Assembly: GCA_907165135.1 (NCBI GenBank)
Contig: OU015568.1
Location: forward strand, 1,860,001-1,924,000
Direction of reading: 5' to 3'
DNA length: 64,000 bases
DNA from: Oikopleura dioica
Lineage: Eukaryota; Animalia; Chordata
Shown: positions 2,628 through 59,640 of the stretch, one piece after another
How the letters are laid out: the number at the start of each line of letters is the position of its first letter
Numbering within the stretch: position 1 is the first letter of the stretch
Translations under genes and position numbers: made by a program
Notes under the pieces: model-generated
Database searches by the model: none
Told to the model about the DNA's origin: nothing
The model's input: only the letters and a program-made list of their open reading frames with translations

Positions 2628-3799
2628 ATGCTTCTATTCTTTTTATTCTTGCAGCTTGGTTTTTCGCAAGAAAAGAGAAAAGTCCTAGTTGATTGCGACC
2701 CAGGAATCGACGATGGACTTGCTCTTCAGTATCTTCTGTATTTGAACTCGACGGTTGAAATTGTTGCAGTGACGATTGTCGACGGAAACACAAAGACCTC
2801 GCAAAGTGCAGCAAATGCTCTTCGACTTTTCAAAAGCCACGGAGTAGATCCTGTCCCGCCGATCTACCTTGGTGCAGACAAAAACACTTCCAGCGATGAT
2901 TGGTTTGGAAAAGACGGTTTCGGCGATCGACAAGACCTCGAGCCCGTTATTTTCAAAGAAGACATTGAACAAGGAAAACATCCAGAGATTAGAACAGACA
3001 AGTCTTCTGCCGAAGCAATTGTTCATTTTTCACGGGAAGTGGGAGATTTGGCGATTTTAGCACTTGGGCCACTGTCGAATATTGCCTCGGCGCTAGAAAT
3101 TGACTCAAAGATACCTGAAAGAGTGAGAGAACTGACTATTATGGGTGGCAATTTGTATGGAACTGGCAACTCACCTGGGCAAGCGGCTGAGTACAATTTT
3201 TGGTTCGATTATCGAGCAGCGGAAAAAGTCATTTCAAGGAAAAGGGGAAGAATATTTTGGGCATTTATCTTCTCTTTTACTTTCGTCCCTTGTAAGCTTT
3301 CTTCCAAAACTGACTCCAAAAATAGTCACAATGGAACTAGCCTTTTCGAATCCCGTTCCCATCTCTTTCTGGGAAAACATGAAAAACGAGTTTCTGAAAG
3401 AAATATCAAAACTCGACGCAGAAAGGTATTTCGGTGAGCGCGAGAAAAGATGCGAGTTCGATTCCGAAAGCGGCTGGCCTCTTTGTGATTTGATCGCCGC
3501 AGTTCTTTGGACAGAGCCAGAAGTGGCACAAGAATCGTGGGAGCACGCGGTGGGTGTTGAAGTCGAAGGAAAATATTCAAAGTAAGGACTTCAATGAGGC
3601 GGATAAAAATGATTAAAGGGGTTTGATGGCGATCGAAAGATACAAAACAGGAGCCGATATGTTCAACTACTCCGGAAAAGCAACTTTGCCAACAAAAATG
3701 AACATGGATCAAATCATGGAATTGGATGGAATTAGAGCTTTTTCGTCCGCGAAAATTTTAACTCTGTCTTATTTTATCGCTGTTTTGCTATTTTTGTGA
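2628..3799 (+). CDS. Inosine-uridine-preferring nucleoside hydrolase family, signal peptide plus hydrophobic C-terminal tail
   Basis: VDCDPGIDD Ca-binding motif, LGPLSNIA, IMGG, AEYNFWFDYRAA and PLCD. GA-AG intron 3239-3296 repairs the frame change between ORFs 2628 and 3145. A GT-AG intron near 3583 leads to the tail ...AFSSAKILTLSYFIAVLLFL*. Confidence 0.9.
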
Positions 3800-3827: not shown

Positions 3828-5730
3828 TCAATTTTGCGCAAAGGAATTGTAAATGAATAATCGTTGAGTTTTGCCATTATTGAAGAACCAGAAAATCGTG
3901 CATCCAATAAACGCGGTCGAAATTCCAAGAGCTGGCCAAAGTGTGGCGTGGACCATTTGAGAAGTTTTGATGGCGCGGTCTTTTGCCACGTGAAGTGGGT
4001 TCTTTGAATCAATTGAAAAAAGACATGGATTGAATTGGATTTTAAAAAGTTACCTCTGTAGACTGAAAGCATGGAAATTGCTGACCGGGGCGTCCCCACT
4101 CGAGTTTGTAGAAATCAACTAAATGAGACTTGAATGAAATCTTTTCAGGATAAATTTTACCTGATAAATTGATGATGGTGTTGTTGCAAGCGCATTCTGG
4201 CGGATGATAACTACAGCTGAGAATGTCAGTAACAAATGAATACTCGTTCGGATGGAGCAGGTAATAAGGCTGTTCTCCGTAATTCGGCTCGACAGCTACC
4301 ACGATTTCAAGACATTTCAAAGTGCTTTTAGGATTTAAAACGACTTTTATTGGGAATTCCTTGCGTTGAAAATATTAACCCTTCCTGATACAACCTCGGT
4401 GAAGGACATTTGTCACTCATTTGGCCATGATGATGGTTCTCTAAGGAGTTTGATTGAGTTTTGTCAGGGCCCTTTCCTGGACATAAGACTTCTCCATTTA
4501 TACGAGACTCCATGACAGTACAGTTTGTTTCGGCGAAATAATATGACTTCATTCCAGGGCAGACGATCTTATAGAGGTTCACATATTTTTCTTATCAGAT
4601 TATCCGAGCTACTTAGGTAAGTAATGACATCAAGAGAAAGCTAGAACTTTCGAAAATCCTTTCAATTTAACCAATTCCCGTAAAAAACTATACAAAATAA
4701 AATTATTGAATATTAAGGTTTCTCTAATGTTGTTTTCTCTTTGAATCCCCTTTCCAGAATCGTATAAACGAGCGAGACGCATGACAAAATGAAGAGAAGA
4801 GTAACAACTGCAAGCGAAAATTGCGACGGTCCGGGGCAGCCGCAGATACTCTGTTTCAAACCTGAATAAAAATCATCAACGAAAATGATTCCATACGATC
4901 GGGAGAGTTTTGTTTGCTACATCTTCGACATTTCTCTGAATTTGACTGATCCTATTTTTCGGCGTTTTTGTCATTATTTTTAAATTGACGATTTTTTTTT
5001 AACTGGCGTGGAAAAAAGTGATAATCTTGTTTTCCCTGCGTGGGATCAAAGGGAGATCAGGGTTAAAAATTCAAAATAAAAAGTGGGCTCTTGAGCTGAC
5101 AACTGGGTGAAAAGGTTTTCGATGAACGGTGGTTTGAAATTTTGATGAGTTTGAACGTAGAAAAAACTGCCTTGGCTGGGAATTAACAGTTTTTTCAAAC
5201 CTGGTATTTTCGTCTTCTTAATCCCGCCGACGATTCGGTAACCACTTTCCTTGCGAATCGCGGCTCTAGAATAATATCTCGTATGTCCGCCTTGGCAGTT
5301 TCGCGGATTAAAACACTGCTCAGGGCCTCTGTAACACCTATCCTCTGTAGCCGCCCTAGAAAAATGCTTCATATTCCACATGATGATTTCTTTATTTTGA
5401 GTATAATGAGTTCTTTGAAAGTTTAGTTTTGTCGGAGCTGTCATTTGGTCACTTAGCAATTTATGAGACAAAACGCAGAAAAGTTGACTTTCAAGATGAT
5501 GCCAGGAATAATTTCACTCAAGAAAATATAGATTATTTTAGTAAAACGGATGATTTAAAACAGTTTGGTAGAATACTAAATTTTCTCCATCTTCTAGAAT
5601 TGGCAAAAATTCTGATCTTATACTGCTGGACAAAATTTCTGGTTCCTTATTGAATTCGTATTCTAGAGCCCCGCCTTGGCCTTCTATCATCTCTAAAGTT
5701 CTTCGAAAACGGTTTGGTCACAATATTCAT
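3828..5730 (-). CDS. BK-channel beta-subunit-like (KCNMB/CaKB family) two-TM protein; 5' exons tentative
   Basis: TM1 FSLAVVTLLFILSCVSLVYTIL, then ETNCTV, KCLEIVV, CSYHPPEC, FPCF and TM2 preceded by MVHATLWP. This mirrors the KCNMB pattern (ESxCT, PCLxVxV, CSYIP, FSCY, LFHSLFWP). Stop at 3828-3830. Confidence 0.7.
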
Positions 5731-12323: not shown

Positions 12324-14395
12324 ATGGGAACAAAGAATGAAGCAGAAGAAAGTCCAGAGATTTCTTCGAGTTCGCGAAGATGGCTGATTATCTTGATTTT
12401 TTCCTGTTATTCGCTGACGAGCGCGTTTCAATGGATTGAGTTTGCGATTTTACCAGGCATCTTTACTGAATATTACGGGTAAGAATATGAAATGATATTG
12501 AACGTTAACTTTTTAATCAGAAAAAAAACCATAAACAGGAGAAAATTTCTTTGAATTTGATTTTTAAAATCGGCAACAATACGAAAAAATCTCCTCAACG
12601 CTTGTGTCACAATATGTACGATTCCTACCTGAAACTTTTACTCATATTTCTTTCGCATTTTGTCTTTCAGAATCAGTCCCAATTACGTCACATGGACATC
12701 TACAATCTACATGGCTACGTTCATTCCTCTCGTCTTCCCCGCCACTTGGCTGGTAGACAACACAGGGCTGAAAAACATCGCTCTCGTCGGGTCCGGAATG
12801 AATGCGCTGGGAGCACTGATAAAATGCCTCGGTCTCGGGCCAGACTCATTTTGGATCTGCTTCATCGGGCAGACAATTGCTGCCTGTGCCCAGGTAGGAC
12901 GAACATCTGTATGGAACACTGCCAGACTCGATTCTAGTGCCTTATTCTCGAGCTTCCACCGAAAATTGCCTCCGTTTGGTTTCCAGCGAATCAAGTTTCT
13001 ACTGCAACATCACTTGGAGTTTTCGGAAATCAACTTGGAGTCGCACTTGGTTTCTGTATTCCTCCGCTGATCGTGAAGGGGCCCTTGAAGATATTTGAAG
13101 ATGTAATGGTTGATCCTAAAGTTGATAACTCTACTTTCTCCGGAGGCTATCCTGGTGATTGGAGTGATGAGGAAAGCTGGGGAGTTAACACGACACAGTT
13201 GGCGAAGGTCGAAGTGAAGGAGCAACTTAGGAAATGTTGAAGTAGAATAAAAAGTCTTTCTTTTTCAAATATTTATGGGGGTTATTACCTTAGATAATTT
13301 ATGAAGCTCATATGCCGATGAAAATATGTCCTGAAGACGCTTGTTATATACTTTCATGACTCATTTATCGTTTTTAGAGATTTTTACTAGAATATTCAAC
13401 ATTTTAAAAGAATTTTATATTACGGACTTGGTGCAATAACCCTCCTCCTCTTCATCCTCGTTTGCCTTACCTTTGCTGATAAGCCGAAGAAATTCGCCAA
13501 CCGTGCTTCCCTTCGTCGATCGGAATTAAAAACTGACGAGTTGGCGAAAGAAAGTGTCATGGATTCGTTTAAAATTTATGGGCAGTCTTTGGTCAGATTG
13601 ATGAAAGACAAAGCCTTTGTGTTGCTGACAGTCTCTTATGGGTTGAATGTTGGTGTTTATTACGCGATTTCGACGCTTCTCAATCAGGTTCCAAATCTTG
13701 TTGGCATGATAATAAACAAGATCTCATTTAGATCATCAAACCAACCTTCTCTCCCGAAATCTACGACGAGCAATTTCTAGCCTCTCTGGACACCCAAATT
13801 GGCTTCATGGGAACAATGATGGTCGTCGCTGGCCTTGCTGGCTCTATCCTCGGTGGCGTCATCCTCGACAAGTTCAAGAAGTTCAAATTGACGACGCTCC
13901 TCTGCTATGGCCTCACGCTAGTGTTTATGGTGCTTTTCAGTATGACCGTCTCTCAAGCGAGCATACTGTGGGACTTTTTGTTCATCAGCGTTTTGGGCTT
14001 TTTCATGACTGGATATTTGCCGATTGGGTTCGAATTCGGGGCTGAATTGACTTACCCAGAATCGGAAGGTAAATGATAGCTGTGGTATTTTGATCGAGAA
14101 TATCTTTTTAGCGACGAGTTCTGGACTTCTCAACTGCGCTGCTCAGTTCTTCGGCTTTTCCGTCACTTTCATTTGCCAATCATTGGTGAACAATGTAAGT
14201 CATTTCCTTGTTTTCATCCAAATCTGACTGTAAATTCGACAATAGGAGGAGAACGGCGGAAGAAATGCAAACCTAGCGATGATAGGCTGCCTGGTTTTGG
14301 GACTGCTTTTGACAATGATGATCAAAGAAGACTTGAAACGACAATCTGCTGAGAACAACGAAGAAACCGAAAACCTCCAGAAACTAGACTCTTGA
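12324..14395 (+). CDS. FLVCR: FLVCR1/2 (SLC49A) MFS transporter
   Basis: [56 protein letters not shown] and [20 protein letters not shown] are FLVCR-family signatures. Confidence 0.9.
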
Positions 14396-21996: not shown

Positions 21997-23965
21997 ATGA
22001 ATCCTTTCCTTTTCTTTTTGCCGCTGATATGCGCGCAGGTAGAGCAAAAACACATGCTGTTCCTGACTGGGGAGGTCGATGGAGAGCGATATCAACAAGG
22101 AAGCTACAGCGTTCACGTGGATGTCTTCAATAAGCCGGTTGATGGAGTTCAGATTGCAAAAGCGGCGGAAACACCTTACGGGGTCTATCAGTCTAGCGGT
22201 GTGGACTCGAACGCGCTTTTCCAGACGATTCTTGCTTCGTTTACTCGATTGGAAGAGGCTGAGTTTGACTACGAACGACACATTTTCTGCCAAGGGCTCT
22301 AGAATCGCTAAAACAGAATAAATCTATCGAGGCGCGAAAAACTTTCGATTCTAGAGCCAATTTCAGCCATGGAGATCTTTGTCGAGTTCTCGATCAAATG
22401 TTACTCGAATATCCAGTTTACGCTGAGCTCCTGGACCTTGCCGGTATTTTCTACATGGGTCACATGACCGTTCCTCTTGAACGATTTGAACAAGGAGTCC
22501 TGAAGACCGACTACTTGGAGGGCGTTAGAAAATTCTACTGTGTCGGCCAGTATGATGGCAAATTCACGGTGGCTTCTGCTGCGAGAGCGTGGAACTTCAC
22601 TCAAGCAGTTCCAGACAGCTGGTTCGGGATCACTTTTGGCGGACGGCACAGACATTTTGGCGAGGGAATGAACTTTGTGATGGACGATATTGAGATTTTT
22701 GAAACGTCGAATACTGAATCAACCGTTCATGGAAAATTGAGAGAGGTTTTCAATCAACGAAGACTTTGTGTGTATTTTTAGTATTTTATGTTTTTCCTGT
22801 TCAACTTGCAAGATCGACTGGAACTCGAGCAGAGCTACTTTGATGCTGAAATTCGACCTATCATGTGAGAACAAACTTTTGCCTTTTCATAAATTTTCTT
22901 TTGAGGAATGAGCTGGCGATGGAACGAAGATTTACAACTCTCGAAGGCGATCTAGATAACCCAGATCAATCTCAAATCGAAGTTCCGCTCAATCCTCAAA
23001 TACAAAAAATGTTTTGCGAGGATGCGATTGAATCCATTCCTGGACGATCTTGTGTTGTTGAGCACGAGGTATCGCTATAGAAACTCAGATATGAGATGAT
23101 CTCGTGTTTTAGTGGCGACCAGAGTATGGAGTAGGTGATGGAGAAGGAAGTGATTACGAAGACATCGCAAATTCAAAACCAAAAGTCAGATATGATGAGC
23201 AAAATGATGCAATGATCATCGAATCTTACAGGATAAGTTTATGATTCAAAAACCATAATACATTCTAGTTTTGCTTCATATAAATTTTTTTTTTTATAAT
23301 TCATAAATTCTGAATTCATAGCTAATAAAAATGTGTGATATAAAAAAAGCTGACCCATAGAAAAAACTCAATAAAGTCACGATTACCATCAACCGCACCC
23401 TGGTTACACCTTCCCTCCACCAGGAACCCTCGGAAACGCTTCGAGCATCGACCTCGTCTTCAAATTCAAAAACCGAAAGTTCATCGCCCGCGCTGCCGGC
23501 ATCTCCGACTGGGAGTCCGTCCCTGAAGGTAACAAATTTCTCCCACCCATTTTTCATTTATTCTAGATACCTGCGACGAAATCATTCAACTCTTCGAAGC
23601 TCAAGCGCTCCAGACTTTGGCTGAATCGAAAAATGGCGCTCAACACTTGGAAAAATACGCACAATATGGATGCCAGCACAAGCTTGTTCCTGAACGAGAT
23701 ACATTCGGGATCTTCTGGCTGAACTCTCCGATGAAATACGAGTACAAGGATGGAAAACTCGAAATGGAACCGAATCGGTTTTATACCGACGAAACAAATA
23801 CTCCCGAAGAAAATCTTGGTAAGACAATTTTTTGCTCTAGAAATAGATGGGATTTTTTTAGATCGACTTGGAGGTATGCTCTACTGTCGGGTAGTTGGGC
23901 CGGCTAGATTTATCGAATGGATTCTTGTCGACAGCTTCAGAAGACGAAATTTGAGACTTTGTTGA
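21997..23965 (+). CDS. Secreted protein of unknown function, multi-exon with GC-AG/GA-AG introns
   Basis: Signal peptide MNPFLFFLPLICA. ORFs 21997, 22398, 22865, 23617 and 23750 link in frame using introns 22296-22354 (GC-AG), 22732-22812 and 23232-23376 (GA-AG) plus GT-AG introns. The protein ends GGMLYCRVVGPARFIEWILVDS...*. Confidence 0.65.
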
Positions 23966-24719: not shown

Positions 24720-27157
24720 AACGCTTTGCTACAAGAACCTGCAAACATGGCATTAAAAAAGAAACAAGCAAGCACTCTGAAATGTCGAAGTGTCGGAGGA
24801 GAAGTCATGATGAGGATTGTCATAAAAGAGCTTCCTTACCGTACTTTACAAAAAGATTTTTTTTTTCAAAGATCCCTCGCAATGATTATCGAAGAGGAAA
24901 ACGAGAAGATTCCGAGTTCGATTAAAATTTCGACCAGAATTCAGGTATGTAAGTTTGGGTGTCGAAAGAATTGACAGAAACAAAGTGTCTCGATTGCGAC
25001 TGCATTGGGACTTTGAGAAAAAAGGGGAGAAAAGTTTACTTGTTGCCCGAAGAAGTGCTGTCAACTCGAAGCATTCGCACTCAAGTGTATGATTTAAAGA
25101 ATTCTGAAAAGGAGAAAACATGGAAGAAAAAAGTGACAGCGAAAACGAGCCTTGCAAAACACGGAAACGCTACGAATAATCAGCTAGGCAGTTATCTCAC
25201 ACTTGGTTCAATTTTCTGGACCACAATCATTCTCATAAGTGCTCTTTTTATTCTTATTTTTAATTAAAAAATATTTTCAAAAGCGAATTTCCAGTCATTA
25301 AAAGAATCTCGTGGCGTTACGACCTTTCTGACTTCGACCTGTCATCGAAACTACAAGAAGTGCGTCCGGACCGCGACAATGGATTATTGTGGCCATTTGA
25401 TGAAACAGTGCCACGAAACCGAAGAGTTCATTCTTCCTGAGCCAATCTCACCAGTTCAACAACTCGAAGCTGCTCCCCTCGTTTTCTCAAAAGAAGAGAA
25501 CCAAATCAATCTCCGCCGCTGTCAAAAGAAACAGTTTTACGACAAGAATACCTGCCGCCATCTTTGCTCGACAACGCTCGTTCTGGAATCAACCAAAGCG
25601 AGACCAATTTCGCCTTGTGAATCGATTTGTTTTGAACTGACTAGAATTTCAAAAGCGGCTGGAGACATTTGTCCGACTCAAAAGTACTGCCGCAGCGGTT
25701 GTCCTTGTCCTTATTATGAATGTGAAAAGATCAAATCGCGGCAGACAATGACTCCTGTTTTCGATTTAAATTCAAAGGCTTCAGAATCAATACCTGATGC
25801 TATTAAAGATTCAATACGTAATTCAACTGGTGACATTAGCTTAATTACAGCTCGTTGGGAAGAGCGAAATAATGAAGCAATAAAATTTCGAAAATTGGCG
25901 TTTTCTGATTTCAATGGAAATTTTGAGCCGATTAGCATTCCAGATTTATTTCTTACTTACGAACGTTATTGTTGATTTAACTCTTAATTTATAAAATCGG
26001 ATCAATAAAAACTTACAAGTCAATTGGAGCAACCTTTCTCAATGGCGAGCACTATTTGGTCGATGCAATCGGAAATTTGCTGAAAGTCAAAGAAAATGGC
26101 GAGCGTCCAATATTTGTTAAGAATCGTCTAAAGAAAAAGTAGGGTCCCCTTAATCGAATGATTCTATTAATTAAGTGGGTTCTTTGTTTTTCACTTTGGT
26201 TCGTCGATCGGAACCCATTATATTGAAATTCGTCATAAAGAAAAAGACACCAAGATTTTTCCCGTTGTCGTTATCTGAAAAAGGTCGAAAGTAAGACACT
26301 CTCGCTTCCTGATTTACTATGTACTCATTCTTTTGACCAGTGAAAAGTTCTCCCACTGGACGAGCAGATAAATGCTATTATTATGCACCCGACTATAGTT
26401 TAAACCGCTTTGAAGAGGCTCAAGGGTACATTGCGAGTAACCATTTCAGCGCGAAGGTGTCTTCAATCAGTTTCAAAGGCGTTTTCTATTTGATGAGTGT
26501 TAAAATGGGCGACCACTACATCAAACTTTCAACGACTGTTGCCTTGAACTCGATTCGAAAAACCGAAGAACAAGAAAAAGGATGGAAGAAAAGTGATATT
26601 CGTCTTCCTGTAGAATTCGAGTATTTAGATCCTGTTCATATTGTTCCCCTGACAAGAGTTGAAATTGATAGTGAAGATTTATTAAGTCTAAAAAAAAATT
26701 TAACTCGTAAAAGTCTGATCAAGGAAGACTCCTTCTTTTCTTGGTCACAAGGAGTATCGCGCTTTCTAACACTTTGTATTCAGTTTTAATGGAAGCGGAT
26801 GGAAAGTTCCTTACTCTCGGCAGCGAGTGGATTGGTTCTCTGGTTGAATACGAAGAAGAATCCATCTGTTTTTCGAAGTTGTATGCCTCGGATGCAGGGG
26901 TCTAAATAGAGAAGTCGAATAAAGACTTAGTCAAGCCAAGTCTCAGTCTAAATCTAGACTTTTTAGTCTAGTCATATTTAGAACTTTGCTCAGATGATCG
27001 AAATTATACAGATCAATTTGCATTCAACAATGACGAATGCGAGTACTTTGCAAATGGAATCATCAATGACGAGAAATTATTTTTGCAAAATTACGTTTTT
27101 GATGCTACATTTGAAGTTGAATTTAACTTTGCAAAGGATTTAAAAATAATAAAATAA
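24720..27157 (+). CDS. Orphan protein with a Cys-rich block and degenerate beta-propeller-like region; start uncertain
   Basis: ORFs 24726, 24959, 25379 and 26340 can be joined, including a probable GC-AG intron 25188-25283. Motif CPTQKYCRSGCPCPYYEC; stop at 27155-27157. Confidence 0.45.
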
Positions 27158-28002: not shown

Positions 28003-29452
28003 ATGTCAATCGTCGGACTTCAGAGCGTTGAAAGACGGAAAGTCCGTATATTAAAGCTTGACCACATAACGAAAGTGAAGAATTTCGTCTGCATTCAAGC
28101 AACTTTCCAGATGACAATTTTGCCAATTCAGTATGATGATAATAAGCCTTACGCATTGCTGCCCGATGGGTCAAGAATAAACAATATATTCGCCGAAAGG
28201 GATGGGAATAAACCGGAGAATAATCAAAAATTCTTAATAAAATACATAATTATAAAAATTGATCTGCATATGAAGACTTCAATATAAGAGCGAATAAAAT
28301 TTTAAGAGACTCAATCGACCTTCATAAGGATAGTTGGCAATTCTTCTTGAACAGTCCATATAATTCCAAATGGGACATTTATTGGTATGTTTATGACTCC
28401 AAAACTTCACTCGTCAATGGTCTACATTATATTTTTGGAGGACAGTCTGATGGCTTCAAGGTTATATTAAATAAAGATGATAGAAATAAAAATAGCTTTG
28501 ATATTATAGATAGCGCGACTGGATGGTTGTCGATTCAAAGAATTATATTTTAGACTTCCTTATGAATGTAAATTTGGACATTCAGCACTTTCTATCAACA
28601 ATGGCAGTAAAGGTTTTCTATCTGAAAAAAACTTGAAGAACAACTAGTATTCTTAGCGGTTATTTGTTTTGGCTACGGGTATGAAAATGATTCTAAGTGT
28701 GCAATATTCACTGGATCAGCAGTTAGAAGAAGCAGATTTCAATCGAAATACACGCACACTAACGGCGCTATGAGTCACTACAAGGATCGTGTGATTGTAA
28801 TAGCTGGAGATGATTGGTTAGGATACGATGATGAATATGGATTAGTTGAAGTTTTTTACGAAAGTGGATGGGAGTATTTTGAACACTTGAGACATCCAAG
28901 GTTCACTTAATAAAAATCTATGAAAAAAAATTTTAGACGTTTGACTCGATTCTCGGCAGTTGGACTACCTCGTGGAAGTACTTTAACAATTGGTGGACGC
29001 GATCAAAAAGCATTTTCTGATGAATTGAATGAAATCTGGCGACTCAAGAGCGATAAATGGTCGATGATCGGGTCAATGTTCAAGGAAATCATTTTTTTCC
29101 ATAGTTGCTTTTCGAGCTTGAATTTTACGTTTTTATTATAGGCAGTTGATTTTCCTGTGGCAATTTTAATGGATAATTTTATTTACGTTTTTCCTGGATT
29201 TATTGACGGAGAATACTCAAGTATTCAAAGAATAGATCTAGGTCAATGCTCAAAAATCTCTCATTTCTTTATGAACTGAAAATCGCCACAAGGCCCTTAT
29301 GATAAGGTAAGTTTCCATATTATGAATTTTTGAGCCCCATAAAAGAATCAGACAAGAAAATGTTTAAATCTCAGGTAATTGCAGAGCAAGGATTTCAAGT
29401 ATCATCTGTCGTTATTCTTGTTATGCCTGTTAATTCGCTTACAAACTGTTAA
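28003..29452 (+). CDS. Divergent Kelch-like beta-propeller protein
   Basis: Repeats VNGLHYIFGG, VIVIAG, TLTIGG...IW and FIYVFPG across short introns, including GA-AG 29085-29141. Ends ...LTNC*. Confidence 0.65.
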
Positions 29453-38270: not shown

Positions 38271-39287
38271 ACACCACGGCTTTTAAATTCCCCATTTTAT
38301 TTAACACTTCCCCCATTTCCCCAACTTATGATGACTCAAACAAGTTTTTTGGATATTGAAAACTCCAAAAACAAAACAAAGCATGAACAACGAACTCTGT
38401 CTTAACGAGGCGAGAGAAATTCGAGAGAGAGAGAATCCTATCATCGTTTATGAATGATAAGTAAAGATCCGCAGGCACTTGCTTCGGGCGATGTCAAAAG
38501 CGGCCTTGGGCACGCGTTTGTTCTGAAAAACCTGATTCGACCCGGATTCGTCAACATCCGACAGGCACAGTTCGGGATGAGCTCGGGGACTTCTGAATCC
38601 AGGGTTTTTCAGCAACTCTAAGCTGCGCTTTTGCCGCAAGAACCGCGATTGGCCATTGCAGAGGCAAGCCGCAGATCGAAAAAACTTGCTTTTGAAATAT
38701 CGAAAATTAACTTTTCGTTCAAAAGTTCTATCTAACGTAAAACTGACATACAATTGAAAAATAACCGATTAAACCTTTTTCGAAGCAACTGTCAGATCAT
38801 CTCACTGTAACTACTTGCCACGTTGGGAACATACAGGTGGCAGCGTTCAAACGCAAGCCCTGGGCCAGTGGCAAGTTTTCTTATTTTGTTCTATTCTCAT
38901 TTACTGTTAATTGAACTAACAAATCTTGCTCTTTTCACATGCCATGTCGATTTTTAACTGACGAAGACTGAAATATTTTTGTCAACAATTAATAAAATTA
39001 ACAAACCAAAATTATGAAAATTTGTTGGAGAAAAAAAATTTGATGCTCAAATGGACTTATGAAAATACCTTCTAAGGACAGTTATATAATCTGTTTTGAA
39101 GTCAAAGCACCAAATTTGGCAAGCATACATCGTGGGGCGGAGGCTCGGAATTACTAGATCGTCATTTTTGGTTGTTTTCCCAATATTAATATTGATCAAA
39201 TCGGCAACCGAGATCTCAGATCGGAAACCGAGATCAACAAAGAAAAATCTCATCGAGGCTCATTTTCCCAGCAAGAACTGGCTCAAA

Positions 39288-42200
39288 ATGGCATTGAGAC
39301 TTGACGGAAAAGCGATTTCCGCGGAAATACGAGAAAATTTGAGGCAACAGGTTGAGAAGATAAGAGAGAGTGATGAGAGTTTTCGACCGGGACTGGCGAT
39401 TGTTCAAGAAAAAGGGTCTACCAACGCTAAATTATCAAGTTTTTCAATATGTTTTCAAATAAAAATCCTTCAAAAAGTCGGCGACAGAGAAGATTCTAAT
39501 GTCTATATCCGAATGAAACTCAGAGGAGCAAAGGAAATAGGCATGAATGCTGAGCATATCAAGCTCCCAAGGTTGGTTTAAAATTGAAAATTTCAAAAGT
39601 CAACTCGTAAGAGCGAAATCCGCTTGTTACGCAAAATTCTTGCAGACGAATTTCCAGCTAGACCTCTTCTGGAAAAGCGTGAAACTTTGTTACCTCAAGT
39701 TATTGCCATATTTAGCTAGTGACCATAAATTGATTCTTACGTAACTATCGTCGATGTTTTTTCAGAGACATCACCGAGGACGACCTGATTGCCAAGCTAA
39801 AGTTGCTCAACTCTGATGATTCTGTCGACGGAATCATCCTTCAACTCCCTCTCGACTCGTCCAATGGAATTGACGGAGAAAAGGTGACGGAGGAAATTTC
39901 GGAATGGAAAGATGTCGATGGGTTGACAACGATGACAGCTGGAAAATTGGCGCGAGGAGAGAAGGATATCTTCGTCCCTTGTACTCCTAAGGGTTGTATG
40001 GAACTGATCAACCGGGCGAACATGAAAACTACTGGGAAACGAGCGGTAGTTTTAGGCAGGAGCAAGATTGTCGGGACGCCGATGTCAGGAAGGGGTCATT
40101 TTGGAAATCATAATGTTCATTTTTTCCAAGGATTTAGGATTTTTATACCCACTTATACTCTGAAATTAAATATTAAGAAGCAAAAGATATTTTGTTTCAA
40201 ACCTGAGTTCGAATTCTATAAGCTAATAAATGATTTATTAGTATTAATGACGCGCTTTTTTTAAGGTTGGGCAAGTTATTTCACCCACATCTTGATTTTA
40301 AACCGTGGAACACCATACATATTTGGAATCAGCAGGATATTTTAAGAACTTTGACGGTTTTAGTTTCCAAAATTTCCACTTCCGGTCCGATTCTAGAGCC
40401 GGAAGTTGACGAAATTTTTGAGTTTGGCCAACTTGTGACCTATCAAATTGATTCTCAGACAATTTTCTATCATCTGAGAGAAGAATCAATGCCGACCGCG
40501 GTCAAATCAACCGCTAAAAACTGAAAGAAAAATCAGAAATTTATGCCTTTTTTCCTAGTTTTGCCGGTCGGTTTGACTGCGGTTGGGACGGTTTTTTTTA
40601 ATGATTTTAAAATGAGTTTACTCAAAATTTTCTGAGCATCAATTTGATAGGTCACAAGTTGGCCAAACTCAAAAATTTCGTCAACTTCCGGCTCTAGAAT
40701 CGGACCGGAAGTGGAAATTTTGGAAACTAAAACCGTCAAAGTTCTTAAAATTTCCTGCTGATTCCAAATATGTATGGCGTTCCAGGGTCTAAAATAAAGA
40801 AGTGGGTGAAATAACTTGCCCAACCTTAAAAAAAGCGCGTCAATGAAACCCTCCATGTTCTTAACCCTCATAAGACTTGCTAAAATGGGCAAATGCGACG
40901 GTCACGTGTTGCCACTCCAAAACAGAGGTAGGTGGTACCAAAATTCTTAGCGCGATTTCCTTATTCTTGATTTTTGACACGCCTACTTTCTGTCTTATCT
41001 CGCGAGTAGTAAACAAGAGACGCTATAAAATCAAGAGTTAATGACATCAAACTTAAGAACTTGGAAGAAATCTGCAGACAAGCAGATATACTCGTCGCTG
41101 CTGTTGGTAAGCCAGGTTTAGTAAAGAAAAGCTGGTTAAAAGAAGGAGCAGTGGTGATTGATTGCGGAATCAATCCTATTCCAGGCAGAGGGAAAATTAT
41201 CTAGCGCAAACTAGTTCGGAAAAGGCATTTGTTAAATCCCCTTCGAAAGAAAGTACAAAGAAATCTGGCCAGAGATTGGTTGGTGATGTCGATCCGGAGT
41301 GCTTTGAAACTGCATCTGCTATGACTCCAGTTCCTGGTGGTGTTGGACCGATGACTGTTGCCATGCTGCTGAAAAATACTTGCGAAGGAAGGGGTAAAAT
41401 TTAAAAACCATAAAGAAAAGGAGCCTTTGAAAACCCTGCACTTTATTCTCTTTTACTTAATTGAACAAACTACAAAATGATAGCATTTCGAGCAGGGTTC
41501 TAAATCGACTAGTCGAGTTTCGACTAAAGTCGAAGTCGAGTCGAGTCTTAGTCGAAAAGACTAGCTCGACTCGACTTGGTTGCTTGTGAGAAAAAGTCGA
41601 CTCGACTCGACTAGAAAATCATATTGATGTCGACTTAATTTCGACTAGTCGAATAAGTCGAAAAAGAAGTTCAAGATGTAGTCGAAAAAGTCGAAAATCA
41701 AGTCGAAAAAGTCGAAAATTGAGTCGAAAAAGTCGAAAATTTAGACGAATAAGTCGAATTGAAAAGTCGAAAACATTCGGCAGTGAACTCAAATCTTTTC
41801 TAGATTTTATAAAAATAGGAAGAATTTTCTGAAGATATCATATTTCTTATTTTTTAGAAGCGCTCCATCAGTCGCCATCCTTCTTTTTACCTCGCGCACC
41901 CTTGTTCGCTCCTCCTCACCCATTTATCCCTTGCTCGCCGCGAGACCGCCAAAGCCTAGCTCGGATTGGGTCGCTCTTACTTTTCATTAAGCTTTCCATA
42001 AAGAACAATATTTTCGATTTTCATGAATATTTTGACAGCAACTAAGCTTGATTGTGTGACTTCATATGTACATTTTTGCTCAAAGTAGTCGGATCTTCAA
42101 GTTCAGGCTGGTTCTTTTAACAAAGGCCGCGGAAATCCCCCGTAAACAATGCAAAGAGCTTATTTCACCCTAGCCTTCTTGGTAACTCAGATTTATCCGT

Positions 42201-45200
42201 TAACTCTTTCGAGAAATCTCAATAAATGAATTTTGAGAAAAAAAGCATGAGATTTTTAATGAAGACAGTCTCAAAGTTTCAATCCAAGTTTAATCTCAAG
42301 CCTTCTTGCGGGGCTTCAAGAGCGAACAAGAGATAACACTGAGAAAGGTGGGCGAGCAAAGGTGCGCCGTCGAAAGCAAGGAGGGCGAACAAGGGGGCGT
42401 AGAAAGCAAAAGAAGGAAAGCGACCAAGGAAACTTTGGTGACAAAAAATGAGCAAAAGGGGGGTCTTGTTGGAGTTTAACCGCGTGGGACGAGTCGTATA
42501 TTCGAATGTCATTTAAGACTTTAGGGGCCCGGTATTCCGAAACTATAAATCCGATAACTTTGAAATTTTAAATTAAGGTTGATTCATGCTCTCTCAGTAA
42601 TTTGTGCAAATGTGGAAGTTTTATCACGGCTCAGTTGCACCTGACACGGGATTAAGTCTGGCCTACTCGAGCGCCCGCTGAGACTTTTACTGTAAAAACG
42701 AACCAATTTGTTTGTTTGAAATATTTAGGCAACTTTAATCTATATTTTTGATGGAATTTCATCAACTGTAACTTCTTTCGAGTGAAAAGAGCACGGAAGA
42801 TGAGAATTAAAGTTTCTCACCTTCATACCTTCTCAAAAATAAGTATTTCTGACGAAACCAAAAACTGAATTCTGACATCAGCAAATGAAAAAGCACATGA
42901 AAATTAGTTTTTCTGATCTCGACTTTTCGACTTTTTATTCGACTTTCGACTTTTTCGACTTATTCGACTTCGTCTCGACTTTTTCGACTTAATTTCTAAT
43001 TTTTTAGAAAATTTTCGACTTTTCGACTAATTAGTCGAATTAGTCGACTCGACTCGACTCGACTCGACTTAGGAGTTTCACAAAGTCTTTCGACTCGACT
43101 CGACTCGACTAGGGATTTTTTGAGTGACGAGCGACTCGACTCGACTCGACTTTTGATTTTGGGCTCAGATTTAGAACCCTGATTTCGAGATTCGAAAGAT
43201 AGTGTTTACTCCAAAAAAGCAAGTTTCAAACGACATGCCTCGCTGATGCGCCTTACCGGCCATGTCGGCCCCTCTGACTGGAACTTGACGAAACTGCCAC
43301 TTACTCTCCTCCGTCCAGTCCCATCCGACATCGATATCGCCCGTGCTCAGCATCCCAAGTACATCCGAACACTTGCCCTTGAATGCGGCATTCTGGAGAC
43401 GGAACTTCTTCAATATGGAAACACAAAAGCTAAGGTCTCGCTAAAAGTTCTCGATCGACTCCAAGATTCTTCACCAGGAAAATACGTTGTTGTCGGAGGA
43501 ATAACTCCAACTCCTCTTGGTGAAGGAAAATCAACAACGACGATTGGCCTCGCTCAGGCGTTAGGAGCGCATTTGGATAAAAACTGCTTCGCGTGCGTTC
43601 GTCAGCCTTCGCAAGGCCCTACATTCGGCATCAAGGGCGGTGCAGCTGGCGGTGGCTACTCCCAAGTCATTCCCATGGACGAATTCAACCTCCACCTCAC
43701 CGGTGACATCCACGCCATCACAGCCGCCAACAACCTCCTCGCCGCGGCCATCGACACGAGAATCTTTCACGAAGCAACTCAACCCGACGAAGCACTGTTC
43801 CGCAGATTGACGACAGATAAATCGAACAAAGTTCGTTTCTCACAAGTTCAGCTCGATCGACTGAGTCGGCTTGGCATCGCGAAATCTGATCCAAATGAGC
43901 TTACGGCTGAGGAGAGGGTTCAATTTGCGAGGCTCGATATTGACCCGGAGCAGGTGATGTGGAATCGAGTTTTGGATGTTAATGATAGGAAAAGGGTTAC
44001 AGAATCTTATATAATCAACGGTATGATACAATTTGGGTATTTTTGACTGTAAATACTGTATCAAATCACTAACCATCAAAAAGATATCTCCGAAAAATCA
44101 CCGTCGGTCAATCTCCCACCGAGAAGAATATCTCCCGAGAAACAAATTTCGACATTTCAGTCGCTTCCGAAATCATGGCGATTCTAGCGCTCGCCACCTC
44201 CCTCAAAGACATGCGAGAGCGACTGGGAAAAATGGTCGTAGCTCTTGACAAGAAAGGAAAACCAGTGATTGCTGATGATCTTGGAATCGGCGGAGCTCTG
44301 ACAGTTTTGATGAAAGATGCGTTGATGCCGAATTTGATGCAGACTTTGGAGGGAACTCCTGTTTTTGTTCATGCAGGGCCCTTTGCGAACATCGCTCATG
44401 GGAATTCTTCGATTCTTGCAGACGCCATTGCGCTCAAACTTGTCGGAGAAGATGGAATCGTCGTCACCGAGGCTGGTTTTGGCAGCGATATTGGAATGGA
44501 AAAGGAAGGGGGATAGACAGAAAGGATACTAGAATAAATAAAAAGAGAATAAGACCTATCCAGATTCCAGTTTTTCAACATCAAATGTCGCGCTTCAGGC
44601 TTGAAACCCGACGCAGCAGTAATTGTTGCTACAATCAGAGCGCTCAAGATGCATGGTGGAGGATCTCCCGTCGCTCCTGGCCGCCCTCTTGCCGATGTAA
44701 ATCCACTAGAAATTTCAAATATAGAATTTTTTAGGAATACAAATCGGAGAATGTGGAACTCGTCGAAAAAGGCTTCTCGAATCTGAAAAAGCAAATTGAA
44801 AATGGCGTTTCCTTCGGAGTCCCTGTCGTTGTTGCTATCAATACGTTTTCGAGCGATACAAAGGCGGAAATTGAGAAATTAATGGAGCTTTCTCACGCTG
44901 CAGGAGCTAGTGAAGCGGTTGTTTGCTCTCATTGGGCTGACGGCGGCGCTGGAGCTACAGGTTCTTTTGCAATAAAATACGGGTTGAATAAATCGAAACT
45001 TAAGATTTGGCGAAGGCAGTTGTAAAAGTCACCCAAGAACCATCCAATTTCAAGTTTTTGTATCCACTAGAAGACTCGATCGAAGACAAAATTCGAAGCA
45101 TCGCGCAAAATATCTACGGCGCCGACGACGTTTCATTTACTGAAGAATGCGCCGAGAAAATCAGAGTGTTTACTGAAGAGGGATTCGGAAATCTTCCCAT

Positions 45201-45467
45201 TTGCATGGCGAAAACTCAGTATTCCCTGTCACATGATCCTGCACTAAAGGTATGTTGCGGGCTGACCATTTGATGCTCAGAGGATAAATTAAGGGTGCCC
45301 CTCGAGGATTCACGCTTCCTATTCGTGACATCAGGGCGGCGGTTGGCGCCGGATTCCTGTATCCTCTCGTGGGTACAATTTCCACGATGCCCGGTCTCCC
45401 GACGCGCCCGAGCTTTTACGACATCGATATTGACTGCGAAACCGAGGAAATTTATGGCCTTTTCTGA
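39288..45467 (+). CDS. MTHFD1: C1-tetrahydrofolate synthase (trifunctional DH/CH/FTHFS)
   Basis: [32 protein letters not shown] and [15 protein letters not shown], then FTHFS motifs [35 protein letters not shown] and TMPGLPTRP. No obvious mitochondrial presequence. Confidence 0.97.
40265..40825. mobile_element. Foldback MITE with TTAA target site (Kolobok-like GG..CC ends) in an MTHFD1 intron
   Basis: GGTTGGGCAAGTTATTTCACCCAC...GTGGGTGAAATAACTTGCCCAACC, ~190-bp near-identical arms, TTAA at 40261-64 and 40826-29. Confidence 0.92.
41493..43181. mobile_element. Non-autonomous hAT element in an MTHFD1 intron
   Basis: 14-bp perfect TIR CAGGGTTCTAAATC, exact 8-bp TSD ATTTCGAG, and dense subterminal GTCGA/TCGAC arrays at both ends. 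No transposase ORF seen. Confidence 0.93.
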
Positions 45468-46292
45468 ACAACTACTCACTGTCTCTTGTTTCCTTAAAAT
45501 TTGCTGGGAATACATTTCATTCTTTCAAATTCTTCCCGAATCGATCTCTTCCAATTTCACCACATTTTTCAACTTTCGTCAAAACTCGTGGTCACGAGAA
45601 GCCCCTAAGTTGGCTCTTTGCCCATCCCGAAAAGAAGCCAACTTGACCTCCAGACTCGGAGTCGGGCTTAAAGTCCACCTGCTGATCAAAACTTGGAAGA
45701 TGGCCAGAACGATGCAGTCTTCCTTTCCTCGGCCCCGGCTCGGACGTTTTAAATTGACCCCTTCGAAAACGGTGATAGCAAAAAGTACACTCTTTTAAAT
45801 GCGATAATTGGTAAGAAAAAGGTCGATTCTTATCATTAACACCTGGTTTCCTCTCCTTTTCAGAGGTGCGGGGCTACCTATTCACATGTTCTGAAAGTGC
45901 TAATCTTTTCCGCGGGATCAGAAATCCTCATCCCTTTTACACTTTTCTGCTCATTTTTGTGTCTCCTACGAAGCCCCCTGACTGAAGCAGACTGAAGCTT
46001 CTGACTGTGTTTTCAGTCAACTGTCGAAAATACGAAAACGGAATTTAAACCCGCTTCCACCTCGCAAAATACAGAAAAAAACCAAGAGGTAAGAGAAAAT
46101 TTTAAGAAATATTGATTTTTTTATTGAGAAAATGGCCGTATGGTCTCCGGGGTTAAGAATAAAGCACACATGTAGCCGGCGGTAAAATATTTATCTAAGG
46201 GTACGTCCTTAATATTTGCCTAGTTCAAAATTGAGAAAGTAAGCGAAGCTCACTATTTTCACACAAAAAATATTTTCTCCGTCAATTCACGG

Positions 46293-57690: not shown

Positions 57691-59640
57691 ATGGCTTCGT
57701 CGTTCGAGGTGTATTGTCATAAGTCCTCCTTGTTTTCGTCTAGCTTCAATCGCTTTGCCAAGTTCCGAGAAGAGTCGAAAGCAATCGACGTTGTCATCAA
57801 ATCTGGCCCGCTTGTATTTGAGGCCCATCAACTCGTCCTTGCCTCGGCTATTCCGTATTTTGAGACACGACTAATGTCATCATGGAAAAAGGGAGATGAA
57901 ATCTCAGTTGAGATTCCAGGAGTAGATCCAACGACAATCACCTCAGGTATCACTTCAATTTGTAATTTCGGATAATAATTCGATGAATTAGTGATTGCAT
58001 GGGCTTATACTGGCGAGATCAAACTTACAAATGAAACCGTTCAGTCGGTACTCATTGTGGCTCAATATCTCGGAATGGAACAAGTCATCACAGCTTGCTT
58101 CGATTTTATTGAGAACCACTTGAATTCGGAAAATGTTCTCGATGTCTTGCAACTAGCAGAGCAGATCTTTCGCCCCGATTTGGCGCTTCGAGCTCGGCAA
58201 TATATCGACCGACACTTTTCTGACTTTTTTCGACTTCCTGTTTGGACAAGCGCGCCTGCTGAATTGGGTAAAGTCAGCTTTTTTGCAAATTCATTATTAA
58301 AGGCTTATTTTTTTCAGTAATGAGCATTTTTGGTTCGTCTGATCTGTATGTCAAGCAAGAGGCGACTGTGTGGGCTGCCCTCAAAATCTGGCTCATGGCG
58401 AATCAATCTTGCGAGGCAAAGCTTATTTTTGAAATGCTCAGCCAAGTTCGCTTGCACCTACTTCCTCCAGAATGTCTTCGCGACGATGTCCTTACCGTCG
58501 ATTTGATTTCAAGCAACGCCAAATGCCGAGCGTTGATAGATAATGCTCTTAACCCAAATGCAAAAAACAACCGAAAGCGAAAGATTTCCGAGGAGAATGT
58601 TGAAGAAACATGTAACGAAGGCAAACTATTAACCACGAGATGGTGCTCTCACTTGGAGAATGACATTTATATTCTGACTACATTGGCCGATGGCTTTGAT
58701 TCTTATGACAATGCCCCCGACTTCTATAAAGGACAACATATGGTTGTTCGGTTTGATGCTTACTCAAAGGTAGAGTCATTCTTTTAATAGAATAAATAAA
58801 GTTTCGGTAAGAAATGTGAGCCAATGGCACCGATGAAGCGGTTTCGTCAAAATTATGCGGTAGCTGTCTTGAATGGAATGATCTACGCGCTAGGTGGAAA
58901 CGATTCCAACGTAGTAGAGCGATACGACCCTCGAACGAACAAATGGGAATTCGTTGCTAATATGCTGTGCTCGGACCGACTGTGGCCGGCATGCACAGTT
59001 ATGAATGGCCGTATCTATGTGTTTGGTGAAAATGGAAAAGAATCAGCCCTCAACGAATGTTACGACCCAAAAAATAACGCCTGGGAAGAAGTGCCTGCTA
59101 TGCAAGTTCCTCGAAGCGCTGCAGCAGCAGTTTGCTTTGAGGAAAAATATATATTACTGGAGGAATTGTCTACGGCAATGGAGGTGAGGAATGGCTTGAT
59201 TCCATGGAAGTTTTTGACGGAAAGGAATGGACGAAAGCTCCGCCAATGCTGAGTCTTCGATCTGATCACGGAAGCCTGGTCTATCATAGAAAGCTTTGGG
59301 TTATCGGCGGTGATAACGGCCCCACCACGATGCGAGATTGTGAACAATTTGATTTTGCCTCTGAGCAATGGACACGCGTTCAGGTTGAAAGACATTATCA
59401 AATGCGGTCAAAATTTTATTTCATTTTTAGTTTCTAAACTCTGCGCGATCTTCCGTCGGCGTCGCTTTATCAGCAAACCGAATCTATGTATTCGATGGCG
59501 ACGATGGAGAAGGCGACTCGTTCGAAATTTATGATCCCGAAAAGGGCTGGTCTTCCTCGAATTATACGAACCGGAGGCCACCAGGAATAGGTGTTCAAGT
59601 TGCTGTTATTCCGAAGAATTGCGCTTCTCTTCAATGTTGA
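57691..59640 (+). CDS. KLHL-like paralog 3 with a 1-nt frameshift (pseudogene or assembly error)
   Basis: Co-linear with paralog 1. At ~59141, gaggaaaaatat lacks one base relative to the EGKIYITGG frame of paralog 1. Confidence 0.75.

What the first reader, a model, noticed from the sequence alone, without database searches (positions are those of the whole stretch)
39408..44570. Non-GT introns of MTHFD1 share a purine/G-run donor and pair with the pre-acceptor segment: possible structure-guided splicing code
Seen: in a highly conserved gene where junctions are fixed by homology, six of eleven introns are non-GT. 40089 GAAGGGGT pairs with ACCCT; 41185 GCAGAGGG with CCTTC; 43989 GAAAAGGGTTA with TAACC; 44505 GAAGGGGGATAG with CTATCC; 39408 AAGGGT with ATCCTT; 41388 GAAGGGGT has only a weak partner. 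Stems fall at about +4..+12 versus -6..-15, and I saw no comparable stems in the GT introns of this gene. Counter-examples with weak stems: 29085-29141 and 25188-25283. Known: GA/GC/GG-AG introns exist in Oikopleura. Inference: end-pairing compensates for poor U1 pairing.
Basis: partly seen in the sequence, partly recalled or inferred. Interest (0 to 1): 0.8.

Follow-up and report, generated by a model that had tools for sequence, protein, structure and literature searches.

The report
Stem-closed non-GT introns in Oikopleura MTHFD1
In this tunicate's MTHFD1 gene, the introns that lack the usual GT start have ends that pair into a short RNA stem a fixed distance from both cut sites. Related lineages keep that stem through matching mutations, which gives a testable clue to how this animal splices its many rule-breaking introns.

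Summary
Observation confirmed and strengthened. The 938-aa MTHFD1 gene (39288-45466, +) has 11 introns. Six are non-GT: four GA-AG, one GC-AG, and one that reads as AA-AG or GA-AA. A fully spliced mRNA contig from a sister lineage (L018) confirms the junction positions.

- **Pairing:** in all six, a segment starting about +4 pairs with a segment ending about -8.
- **Statistics:** across six MTHFD1 lineages, non-GT introns average -8.3 to -8.7 kcal/mol (z about -2 against shuffles, all negative). GT introns average -1.9 to -3.5 kcal/mol (z about 0). The 10 non-GT and 9 GT intron positions separate completely.
- **Conservation:** intron interiors have diverged to random level, yet every lineage keeps a stem, with at least six double compensatory changes.

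These introns also lack a pyrimidine tract and end in an A-rich tail. Two GT introns share the same architecture, so the class is defined by the stem and the tail, and the second base of the intron is free to vary.

That the stem compensates for weak U1 pairing is untested. Some apparent non-GT introns elsewhere in the window lack stems. The scan reported the same phenomenon on other windows of this genome (s1-371336, s1-378092). I found no published description.

The parts
39288..45466 (+). MTHFD1 (C1-tetrahydrofolate synthase) gene, 12 exons, 938 aa
   Evidence: Spliced translation is colinear with P0002. The orthologous spliced mRNA contig L018 has every junction at the same codon positions.
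39409..39477 (+). Intron 1, 69 nt, AA-AG (or GA-AA if slid 1 nt). Arms AAGGGT 39412-39417 and ATCCTT 39465-39470.
   Evidence: E -5.5, z -3.2; rank 1/38. The mRNA junction ...gttcaag|t... is confirmed in relatives by read loose ends and by L018.
40089..40874 (+). Intron 3, 786 nt, GA-AG. Arms GGGGT 40092-40096 and ACCCT 40864-40868. Contains a palindromic MITE at 40255-40846.
   Evidence: Its orthologue in L001 (GA-AG, AAAAGTGAA/TTCATTTTT, z -3.5) is spliced exactly at the GA site in L018.
41185..41249 (+). Intron 5, 65 nt, GC-AG. Arms GAGGG 41188-41192 and CCCTT 41239-41243.
   Evidence: the terminal helix is in the MFE fold; rank 1/34. Orthologues: L004 AAGGGG/CCCCTT, L001 AGGC/GCCT, L009 GGCT/AGCC.
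41388..43219 (+). Intron 6, 1832 nt, GA-AG. Arms GGGGTAAA 41391-41398 and TTTACTCC 43205-43212 (8 bp, one G.U). Contains a 1.7-kb repeat-flanked element at 41490-43170.
   Evidence: The acceptor is fixed by L001/L018 homology. E -9.9, z -3.1; rank 14/1801. Covariation with L004, L001, L006 and L009.
43989..44083 (+). Intron 7, 95 nt, GA-AG. Arms GGTTA 43995-43999 and TAACC 44070-44074. Lineage-specific: present only in the window and in L004/L005.
   Evidence: L004 extends the stem to 7 bp, GGTTGCA/TGTAACC.
44505..44570 (+). Intron 8, 66 nt, GA-AG. Arms GGATAG 44511-44516 and CTATCC 44556-44561.
   Evidence: the MFE fold is the terminal helix, 53% of the ensemble. Three different Watson-Crick pair types occur at one helix position across lineages.
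39572..39765 (+). Intron 2, GT-AG, no terminal stem (control)
   Evidence: the relative's read ends match the junction; z +0.7
40928..41057 (+). Intron 4, GT-AG, no terminal stem (control)
   Evidence: z -0.4
44697..44734 (+). Intron 9, GT-AG, 38 nt, T-rich 3' tract, no terminal stem (control)
   Evidence: z -0.2
44961..45004 (+). Intron 10, GT-AG, 44 nt, no terminal stem (control)
   Evidence: z +0.6
45250..45293 (+). Intron 11, GT-AG, 44 nt, no significant terminal stem (control)
   Evidence: E -7.3, z -1.0

Best explanation
**What it is.** These are spliceosomal (U2-type) introns of the known Oikopleura G*-AG non-canonical kind, and they form a distinct architectural class with four features:
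- an invariant exonic AG before the cut;
- a donor of the form G-A/C-A-n-G-G-(G-U);
- a 5-10 bp helix between intron positions about +4..+11 and about -15..-8;
- an A-rich tail of about 7 nt (for example CAAAAAG) in place of a pyrimidine tract.

**How it probably works.**
- Shown: selection maintains the helix as pairing, not as sequence.
- Inferred: by tying the 5' splice site to the branch/3' splice-site region, the helix defines the intron as a unit. It would replace the cross-intron bridge normally built from U1 at a GT donor and U2AF at a pyrimidine tract. With that bridge supplied in cis, the +2 base is free to be A, C or T.
For: 1. Six of six non-GT introns in the window have the helix in one register, and the GT introns do not.
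2. The effect exceeds composition. All 19 z-scores are negative (mean -2.2). Cognate pairing averages -8.3 against -5.7 for cross-pairs. The pre-acceptor window is the top-ranked partner within the intron.
3. There is an out-of-sample replicate. MTHFD1 of two other Oikopleura-like species (L012, L016) has mostly different intron positions. All 4 GA-AG introns there have stems (n=8 sequences, mean z -2.0) and none of the 4 GT-AG introns does (mean z +0.3, U=0).
4. Intron interiors between deep lineages are at shuffled-level identity and the arms themselves are only 30-60% identical, yet every lineage keeps a helix.
5. Double compensatory changes are seen: I8 A-U/U-A and U-A/C-G/A-U; I6 G-C/U-A, A-U/U-A and A-U/C-G; I5 G-C/C-G. 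For I3, cognate pairing is -7.0 against -2.0 across lineages.
6. Two 98%-identical contigs of one lineage carry GT (L001) or GA (L006) at the same I6 donor with the same stem. A GT-AG intron in L002 has the same helix and tail (E -15.4, z -3.9, rank 1/116).
7. The mRNA contig L018 shows the GA sites are the ones used in lineage B.
8. A second gene in the window has a GA-AG intron with a 10-11 bp stem: FLVCR 13231-13410, z -4.6, rank 1/149.
9. The literature leaves the mechanism of GA-AG splicing in O. dioica open (PMC7072748).
Against: - No RNA from the window's own lineage could be laid. The runs offered belong to a lineage whose reads match the window at only 90-95% in exons, so window junctions rest on homology.
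- The helices are short and thermodynamically marginal as closures of 40-1800-nt loops. Whole-intron folds are no more stable than shuffles, and in I1 and I7 the terminal helix is not in the MFE fold.
- The helix occupies +4..+8, which U1 and U6 need, so a positive role is not self-evident.
- Part of the signal is a class-level GGG(U)/ACCC motif pair that trans factors could equally read.
- Orthologous sequences are not statistically independent.
- At least two candidate non-GT introns in the window lack stems.
- No functional test exists.
Confidence: 0.65

Rival explanations
1. The complementary ends are decaying terminal inverted repeats of the transposons (MITE- or introner-like) that created these introns. 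They mark origin and have no role in splicing.
For: - TIR-bearing, transposon-derived non-canonical introns are documented in the larvacean Fritillaria borealis and in algal and dinoflagellate introners (PMC11282704).
- Oikopleura is listed among taxa with intron gain by transposon insertion (PMC3443670).
- Intron 7 is lineage-specific.
- Some stems start at +1 like a TIR: L012 i1 and FLVCR.
- The window holds MITEs with TIRs inside introns 3 and 6.
Against: - Introns 5, 6 and 8 are shared by lineages whose intron interiors are saturated, yet all keep a helix through compensatory double changes. Neutral relics would have decayed.
- The short non-GT introns have no other copy in the 64-kb window.
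- No target-site duplication is seen beyond the generic AG.
- The fixed offset (+4 / -8) from the cut sites is not what TIRs at element termini predict.
Confidence: 0.12
2. Two independent linear signals happen to be complementary. One is a G-run (or GGU) just downstream of the cut, acting as an intronic enhancer or as a shifted U1 landing site. The other is a C-rich, branch-site-like element before an A-rich tail, read by U2/SF1 or a U2AF2 variant. Each is conserved for its own trans factor, and the pairing is incidental.
For: - The class logo shows G at +6 in 26/28, G at +7 in 17/28 and T at +8 in 19/28 sequences. This is a pseudo donor G|GU that could pair with U1 nucleotides 7-10. C is enriched at -11..-8.
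- About half of the 3' arms contain a yUnAy branch-like motif (CTAAC, TTAAC, TTTAC, CTGAT).
- Cross-pairs among non-GT introns are already stronger (-5.7) than pairs involving GT introns (-3 to -4).
- A U2AF2 paralogue that binds A-rich intron ends exists in F. borealis (PMC13326754).
- Use of the human FGFR GA donor is reported to depend on a nearby canonical site (as cited in PMC7072748).
Against: - Cognate pairing beats cross-pairing by a further 2.6 kcal/mol.
- Positions outside the GG/CC core covary: A-U/U-A, U-A/C-G, G-C/U-A.
- Arms lacking G-runs still pair: L001 I3 AAAAGTGAA/TTCATTTTT, L012 i1 GAATCGTTT/AAACGATTC, FLVCR AAATGTTGAA/TTCAACATTT.
- Linear protein or snRNA motifs do not predict such compensations.
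Confidence: 0.15
3. Chance or composition. Purine-rich donors and pyrimidine-containing acceptor regions pair trivially, and the gene was noticed because of it.
For: - Shuffled arms of non-GT introns already give -3 to -6 kcal/mol, against -1 to -3 for GT introns.
- Individual p-values are modest (0.004-0.26).
Against: - All 27 non-GT sequences have negative z.
- 10 non-GT against 9 GT intron positions separate completely, about 1 in 92,000 by rank.
- The replicate in unselected introns of other species agrees.
- Positional specificity within introns and covariation both argue against chance.
Confidence: 0.03

Closest known systems
Oikopleura dioica non-canonical G*-AG (GA/GC/GG-AG) introns
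   Same: Same organism group and same termini. About 11-12% of introns are non-canonical, and GA-AG outnumbers GC-AG. [quoted passage not shown] The donors found here fit that description.
   Different: The papers I could read describe only the flanking linear consensus and leave the mechanism open. None mentions complementarity between the intron ends, the fixed register, the A-rich tail without a pyrimidine tract, or covariation.
Euglenid nonconventional and intermediate introns
   Same: A short helix brings the intron ends together in almost the same register: +4..+6 with -8..-6, with a spacer of 5-6 nt to the 3' cut. They have no polypyrimidine tract, and the pairing is genetically required (PMC11282704, PMC12501133, PMC4770533).
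   Different: Euglenid borders are variable and are not G...AG. The paired triplets are a fixed CAG/CTG. Excision yields circles, by an unknown and possibly non-spliceosomal machinery. Here the G+1, the AG-3' and the exonic AG|G context are kept, and the arm sequence is free and longer (5-10 bp).
Transposon-derived (MITE/TIR) non-canonical introns of Fritillaria borealis; introners of Micromonas and dinoflagellates
   Same: F. borealis belongs to the same animal class (larvaceans). These are non-canonical introns with terminal inverted repeats, at species-specific positions, spliced by a permissive U2 spliceosome (PMC11282704, PMC13326754).
   Different: F. borealis termini are mostly AG-AC or AG-AT, with TSDs and multi-copy families. 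Here the termini are GA/GC-AG, no TSD or family copies were found in the window, and the stems persist by compensatory change in old shared introns.
Structure-assisted splicing in yeast (complementary boxes between the 5' splice site and branch-point regions)
   Different: In yeast it occurs in long GT-AG introns with strong consensus signals and has no fixed register relative to the cut sites. It is not linked to non-canonical termini.
U12-type (minor) introns
   Same: No polypyrimidine tract, and a conserved element 10-15 nt upstream of the 3' cut.
   Different: The 5' consensus RTATCCTT and the branch box TCCTTAAC are absent. O. dioica has lost the minor splicing apparatus (bioRxiv 10.1101/2022.09.24.509304).

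Membership tests
Oikopleura G*-AG non-canonical spliceosomal introns | Intron starts with G followed by a non-T base and ends with AG | tested here: met
   I3, I6, I7 and I8 are GA-AG and I5 is GC-AG. I1 is ambiguous (AA-AG or GA-AA).
Oikopleura G*-AG non-canonical spliceosomal introns | Removed from mature mRNA exactly at those sites | tested here: inconclusive
   Met for lineage B: the spliced contig L018 lacks I1-I6 and I8-I11 exactly at the modelled junctions. No RNA of the window's own lineage could be laid, because reads match it at only 90-95% in exons.
Oikopleura G*-AG non-canonical spliceosomal introns | Conserved exonic AG before the GA and an A after it | tested here: met
   -2 A in 28/28, -1 G in 28/28, +3 A in 22/28; compare PMC7072748.
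Euglenid nonconventional introns | Helix between about +4..+6 and -8..-6 bringing the ends together; no pyrimidine tract | tested here: met
   The outermost pair is at median +4 / -8. The tail is 38% A and 27% T, against 56% T in GT introns.
Euglenid nonconventional introns | Variable non-G...AG borders and a CAG/CTG core | tested here: not met
   G+1 in 27/28 and AG-3' in 28/28. The arms are variable and are not CAG/CTG.
Euglenid nonconventional introns | Excised as full-length circles by non-spliceosomal machinery | not testable with these tools
   Needs RNA from this lineage (lariat versus circle sequencing).
MITE/TIR-derived introns (Fritillaria type, introners) | Terminal inverted repeats at the intron ends | tested here: inconclusive
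   Complementary arms exist, but they mostly start at +4 and end at -8 rather than at the termini.
MITE/TIR-derived introns (Fritillaria type, introners) | Multi-copy family and target-site duplication | tested here: not met
   The short introns have no second copy in the 64-kb window, and no TSD beyond the generic AG. The whole genome was not available.
Mirtron or intron-hosted snoRNA | The whole intron folds into a stable hairpin, or matches a known RNA family | tested here: not met
   Whole-intron MFE z-scores are -1.3 to +0.7. No Rfam match at E<=1 over 39000-45600.
U12-type introns | RTATCCTT donor and TCCTTAAC branch box | tested here: not met
   The donor logo is GAAnGGGT, and the 3' arms are variable.

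The most novel reading that the evidence does not exclude
A chordate uses a second, structure-based intron recognition code. A cis helix in a fixed register (+4 / -8) followed by an A-rich tail would be necessary and sufficient for the ordinary U2 spliceosome to excise introns that lack both the GT and the pyrimidine tract. This would be a convergent counterpart of the Euglena nonconventional splicing code, and it would explain how about one in nine Oikopleura introns escape the GT rule.
Probability: 0.4. Interest if true: 0.9.

Novelty: new variant of a known kind. Interest (0 to 1): 0.75.

Why it matters
How Oikopleura, and larvaceans generally, splice thousands of non-GT introns with a conserved U1 is an open question. 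Proposals so far include U1 variants, m6A on U1 and divergent U2AF (PMC7072748, PMC13326754). A covarying helix at a fixed distance from both cut sites is a concrete cis element that can be mutated. It turns the question into a compensatory-mutant experiment. It would improve gene prediction for non-canonical introns in these genomes. It would also link animal non-canonical splicing to the end-pairing logic of euglenid and transposon-derived introns.

Tried and rejected
1. **RNA reads.** The runs offered carry the same species label but belong to another cryptic lineage. Reads matched the window at 90-95% in exons and gave no joints at MTHFD1 junctions. Only loose ends agreed with I1, I2 and I4.
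2. **Ab initio intron annotation of the whole window.** I used open-frame, codon-score and splice-PWM criteria. It mis-picked even known MTHFD1 introns, so I make no window-wide frequency claim.
3. **MAFFT alignments of intron 8 for the count of structure pairs.** The arms of different registers fell in different columns. I used splice-site-anchored coordinates in a script instead.
4. **Mirtron or snoRNA host.** Rejected.
5. **Introner family.** The short introns have no copies in the window.
6. **In-frame GT at +7 as the true donor of I3 and I6.** It would insert Gly-Arg. I rejected it because the closest relative L004 has its GT out of frame, and lineage B mRNA uses the GA sites.
7. **Papers not held.** PMC152907 (FGFR GA donor) and PMC3760481, my recalled id for the Oikopleura genome paper, were not available. 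A prior mention of end-pairing there, or in Henriet et al. 2019, cannot be excluded.

Full report
**Context.** The window has the hallmarks of an Oikopleura dioica-complex genome: about 40% GC, tiny introns and many G*-AG introns. An earlier scan note names the Okinawan lineage; I did not verify that. RNA runs offered under the same species label match the window at only 90-95% in exons. They therefore come from another cryptic lineage, and they gave no junction-spanning reads for MTHFD1.

**Gene model.** I read 39000-46200 and spliced the open frames. The result is a 938-aa C1-tetrahydrofolate synthase starting at 39288. It is colinear with homologue P0002, with no gaps at the junctions of introns 7-11.
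- The eleven introns are listed under 'parts'.
- Intron 1 can be written AA-AG or GA-AA, because one base slides.
The orthologous contig L001 and its mRNA read ...[14 protein letters not shown]..., which places the window acceptor at 43219.

**Relatives.** Protein searches with single exons, cluster look-ups and contig look-ups returned marine-metagenome contigs of the same gene. They come from several lineages:
- L004/L005, 88.6% identical to the window;
- L001/L006/L011 (lineage B);
- L007/L008/L010;
- L009;
- two further Oikopleura-like species, L012-L015 and L016, mostly with other intron positions (their i1 lies at the window's I1 position);
- two intron-poor species, L002 and L003.

L018 is a 2995-nt contig 99-100% identical to the exons of lineage B. 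Introns 1-6 and 8-11 are removed in it exactly at the modelled junctions (intron 7 does not exist in that lineage), and it carries one complete ORF. This is RNA-level evidence that the GA donors are used in lineage B, not the GT found a few bases downstream.

I located orthologous junctions with a script that maximises peptide identity across the junction without imposing splice dinucleotides. Every call came out as G...AG.

| Set | Class | n | mean E (kcal/mol) | mean z vs shuffled arms |
|---|---|---|---|---|
| Window + orthologues | non-GT | 19 | -8.3 | -2.2 (all negative) |
| Window + orthologues | GT | 17 | -3.5 | -0.3 |
| Species E/F: L012, L015, L016 | GA-AG | 8 | -8.7 | -2.0 |
| Species E/F: L012, L015, L016 | GT-AG | 7 | -1.9 | +0.3 |

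- The only strongly negative GT case in the first set is the GT allele of intron 6 in L001.
- Non-GT donors paired with acceptors of other non-GT introns give -5.7, and with GT acceptors -4.0. About half of the excess is therefore a class-level complementary motif pair (G-run/C-run) and half is intron-specific.
- In the species E/F set, three of the four GA-AG introns lie at positions not shared with the window. None was chosen for having stems.
- Counting intron positions rather than sequences, the 10 non-GT and 9 GT positions separate completely.
- Scanning each intron with the 5' arm, the window at -18..-5 is the best or near-best partner for non-GT introns: median percentile 3%, with rank 1/151, 1/149 and 14/1801 in long introns. 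For GT introns the median percentile is 62%.

**Geometry and associated features.**
- With wider windows, the outermost base pair sits at a median of +4 and -8, and helices are 5-13 bp.
- The tail between the helix and the AG is purine/A-rich (CAAAAAG, TGAAAG, TAAG). GT introns have T-rich tracts instead: 56% T against 27%.
- The donor logo is AG|GAAnGGGT, with G at +6 in 26/28. Total matches to the U1 consensus are similar in the two classes: 6.1 against 6.75 of 11.
- Whole-intron folds are not unusually stable. The terminal helix is the MFE, or part of it, in most short examples, but not in window I1 or I7.
- There is no Rfam match, so these are not mirtrons or snoRNA hosts.

**Conservation and covariation.**
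- Between deep lineages, intron interiors align no better than shuffled sequence, and the arms themselves are only 30-60% identical. Every lineage nevertheless has a helix in introns 3, 5, 6, 7 and 8.
- In splice-site-anchored register, intron 8 shows A-U/U-A at one pair and U-A/C-G/A-U at the next.
- Intron 6 shows G-C/U-A, A-U/U-A and A-U/C-G, plus several G.U intermediates.
- Intron 5 shows G-C/C-G. In intron 7, L004 gains two pairs.
- For intron 3, cognate pairing is -7.0 against -2.0 across lineages. For introns 5 and 6 it is about -8.5 against -6.1.
- Two 98%-identical contigs of lineage B differ at +2 of intron 6, GT in L001 and GA in L006, with the same stem.
- The only intron of L002 in this region is GT-AG, with a 9-bp stem at +5..+13 / -17..-9 and an A-rich tail (E -15.4, z -3.9, rank 1/116).

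The class is therefore defined by the helix and the tail. The +2 base is simply unconstrained within it.

**Origin.**
- Intron 7 exists only in the window and L004/L005. Introns 3-8 are absent from L002 and L003, so the class turns over quickly.
- The short introns have no other copies in the window, and there is no TSD beyond the generic AG.
- Introns 3 and 6 were enlarged by a palindromic MITE and by a repeat-flanked element, which would themselves fold back and keep the ends close.

A transposon origin for some of these introns remains possible. It does not explain the maintained pairing.

**Mechanism.**
- Shown: there is a conserved, covarying, position-specific helix in an intron class that lacks a GT and a pyrimidine tract.
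- Inferred: the helix substitutes in cis for cross-intron bridging between U1 at the donor and U2AF at the tract.
- Unresolved: whether it helps or competes with U1 and U6 at +4..+8. It is also open whether the frequent GGU at +6..+8 is a shifted U1 landing site, and whether the branch point lies in the 3' arm. About half of the arms contain a yUnAy motif.

**Limits.**
- There is no RNA from the window's own lineage.
- Orthologues are not independent samples.
- The window-wide frequency is unknown, because my ab initio annotation failed.
- At least two candidate non-GT introns (29085-29141, 25188-25283) have no stem but do have T-rich tracts. The FLVCR GA-AG intron (13231-13410) has a 10-11 bp stem.

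**Comparison with what is known.**
- GA-AG introns and their linear flanks are published for O. dioica, with the mechanism left open (PMC7072748, PMC8008620).
- End-pairing at +4 / -8 is the hallmark of euglenid nonconventional introns (PMC11282704, PMC12501133).
- TIR-bearing non-canonical introns occur in Fritillaria (PMC11282704), and a U2AF2 paralogue there binds A-rich intron ends (PMC13326754).
- Six full-text searches found no paper describing end-pairing in Oikopleura introns. Two key subscription papers could not be read.
- The scan's own earlier follow-ups on other windows of this genome (s1-371336, s1-378092) reached the same reading. My evidence is independent of theirs.

Noticed in passing
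window 40255-40846: Intron 3 holds a palindromic element of about 590 nt whose two halves are 85% complementary. It contains the motif ATTCTAGAGCC, which also forms the terminal repeats at 22295-22358 and 5262-5670.
   Followed up: partly
window 41490-43170: Intron 6 holds a 1.7-kb element flanked by inverted arrays of GTCGAAAAA-type and CGACTCGACTCG-type short repeats. RNA reads of the other lineage pile up only on these repeat arrays, with strand-switching joints. Copies of the repeat are therefore transcribed elsewhere in that lineage.
   Followed up: partly
L001:1268-1269 versus L006:357-358: Two 98%-identical contigs of one lineage differ at the second base of intron 6, GT against GA, with the same terminal stem. 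This looks like a within-lineage polymorphism between a canonical and a non-canonical donor.
   Followed up: partly
window 43989-44083; L001:2205-2206: Intron 7 is present in the window and in L004/L005 but exactly absent from four other lineages and from the other species. It is a recent gain or a recurrent loss.
   Followed up: partly
non-GT donors, e.g. window 40094-40096, 41393-41395, 43995-43997: Most non-GT donors carry a G|GT 5-8 nt downstream of the real cut (T at +8 in 19/28). In window introns 3 and 6 it is in frame and would add Gly-Arg. It could be a shifted U1 landing site or a cryptic donor masked by the stem.
   Followed up: partly
window 43910-43920: Exon 7 contains a perfect class-type donor motif, AG|GAGAGGGT, that is not used as a splice site according to protein colinearity. 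It is a natural decoy for testing what else the class needs.
   Followed up: no
L018 (whole contig): A JGI metagenome-collection contig is a complete, fully spliced MTHFD1 mRNA of lineage B. Metatranscriptome contigs in that collection can therefore serve as junction evidence for Oikopleura genes.
   Followed up: yes
L012:76-161 and window 39409-39477: The intron after ...AIVQ lies at the same position in the window and in a distant Oikopleura-like species. The sequences are unrelated and the termini differ: GA-AG with a perfect 9-bp terminal repeat in L012, AA-AG or GA-AA in the window.
   Followed up: partly
window 23232-23376, 3569-3650, 59142-59293: My ab initio scan proposed further GA-AG candidates without stems. 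One has a GATAAGT donor, close to the U1 consensus. This hints at a second, stem-less subclass of GA-AG introns. None of these candidates was verified.
   Followed up: no
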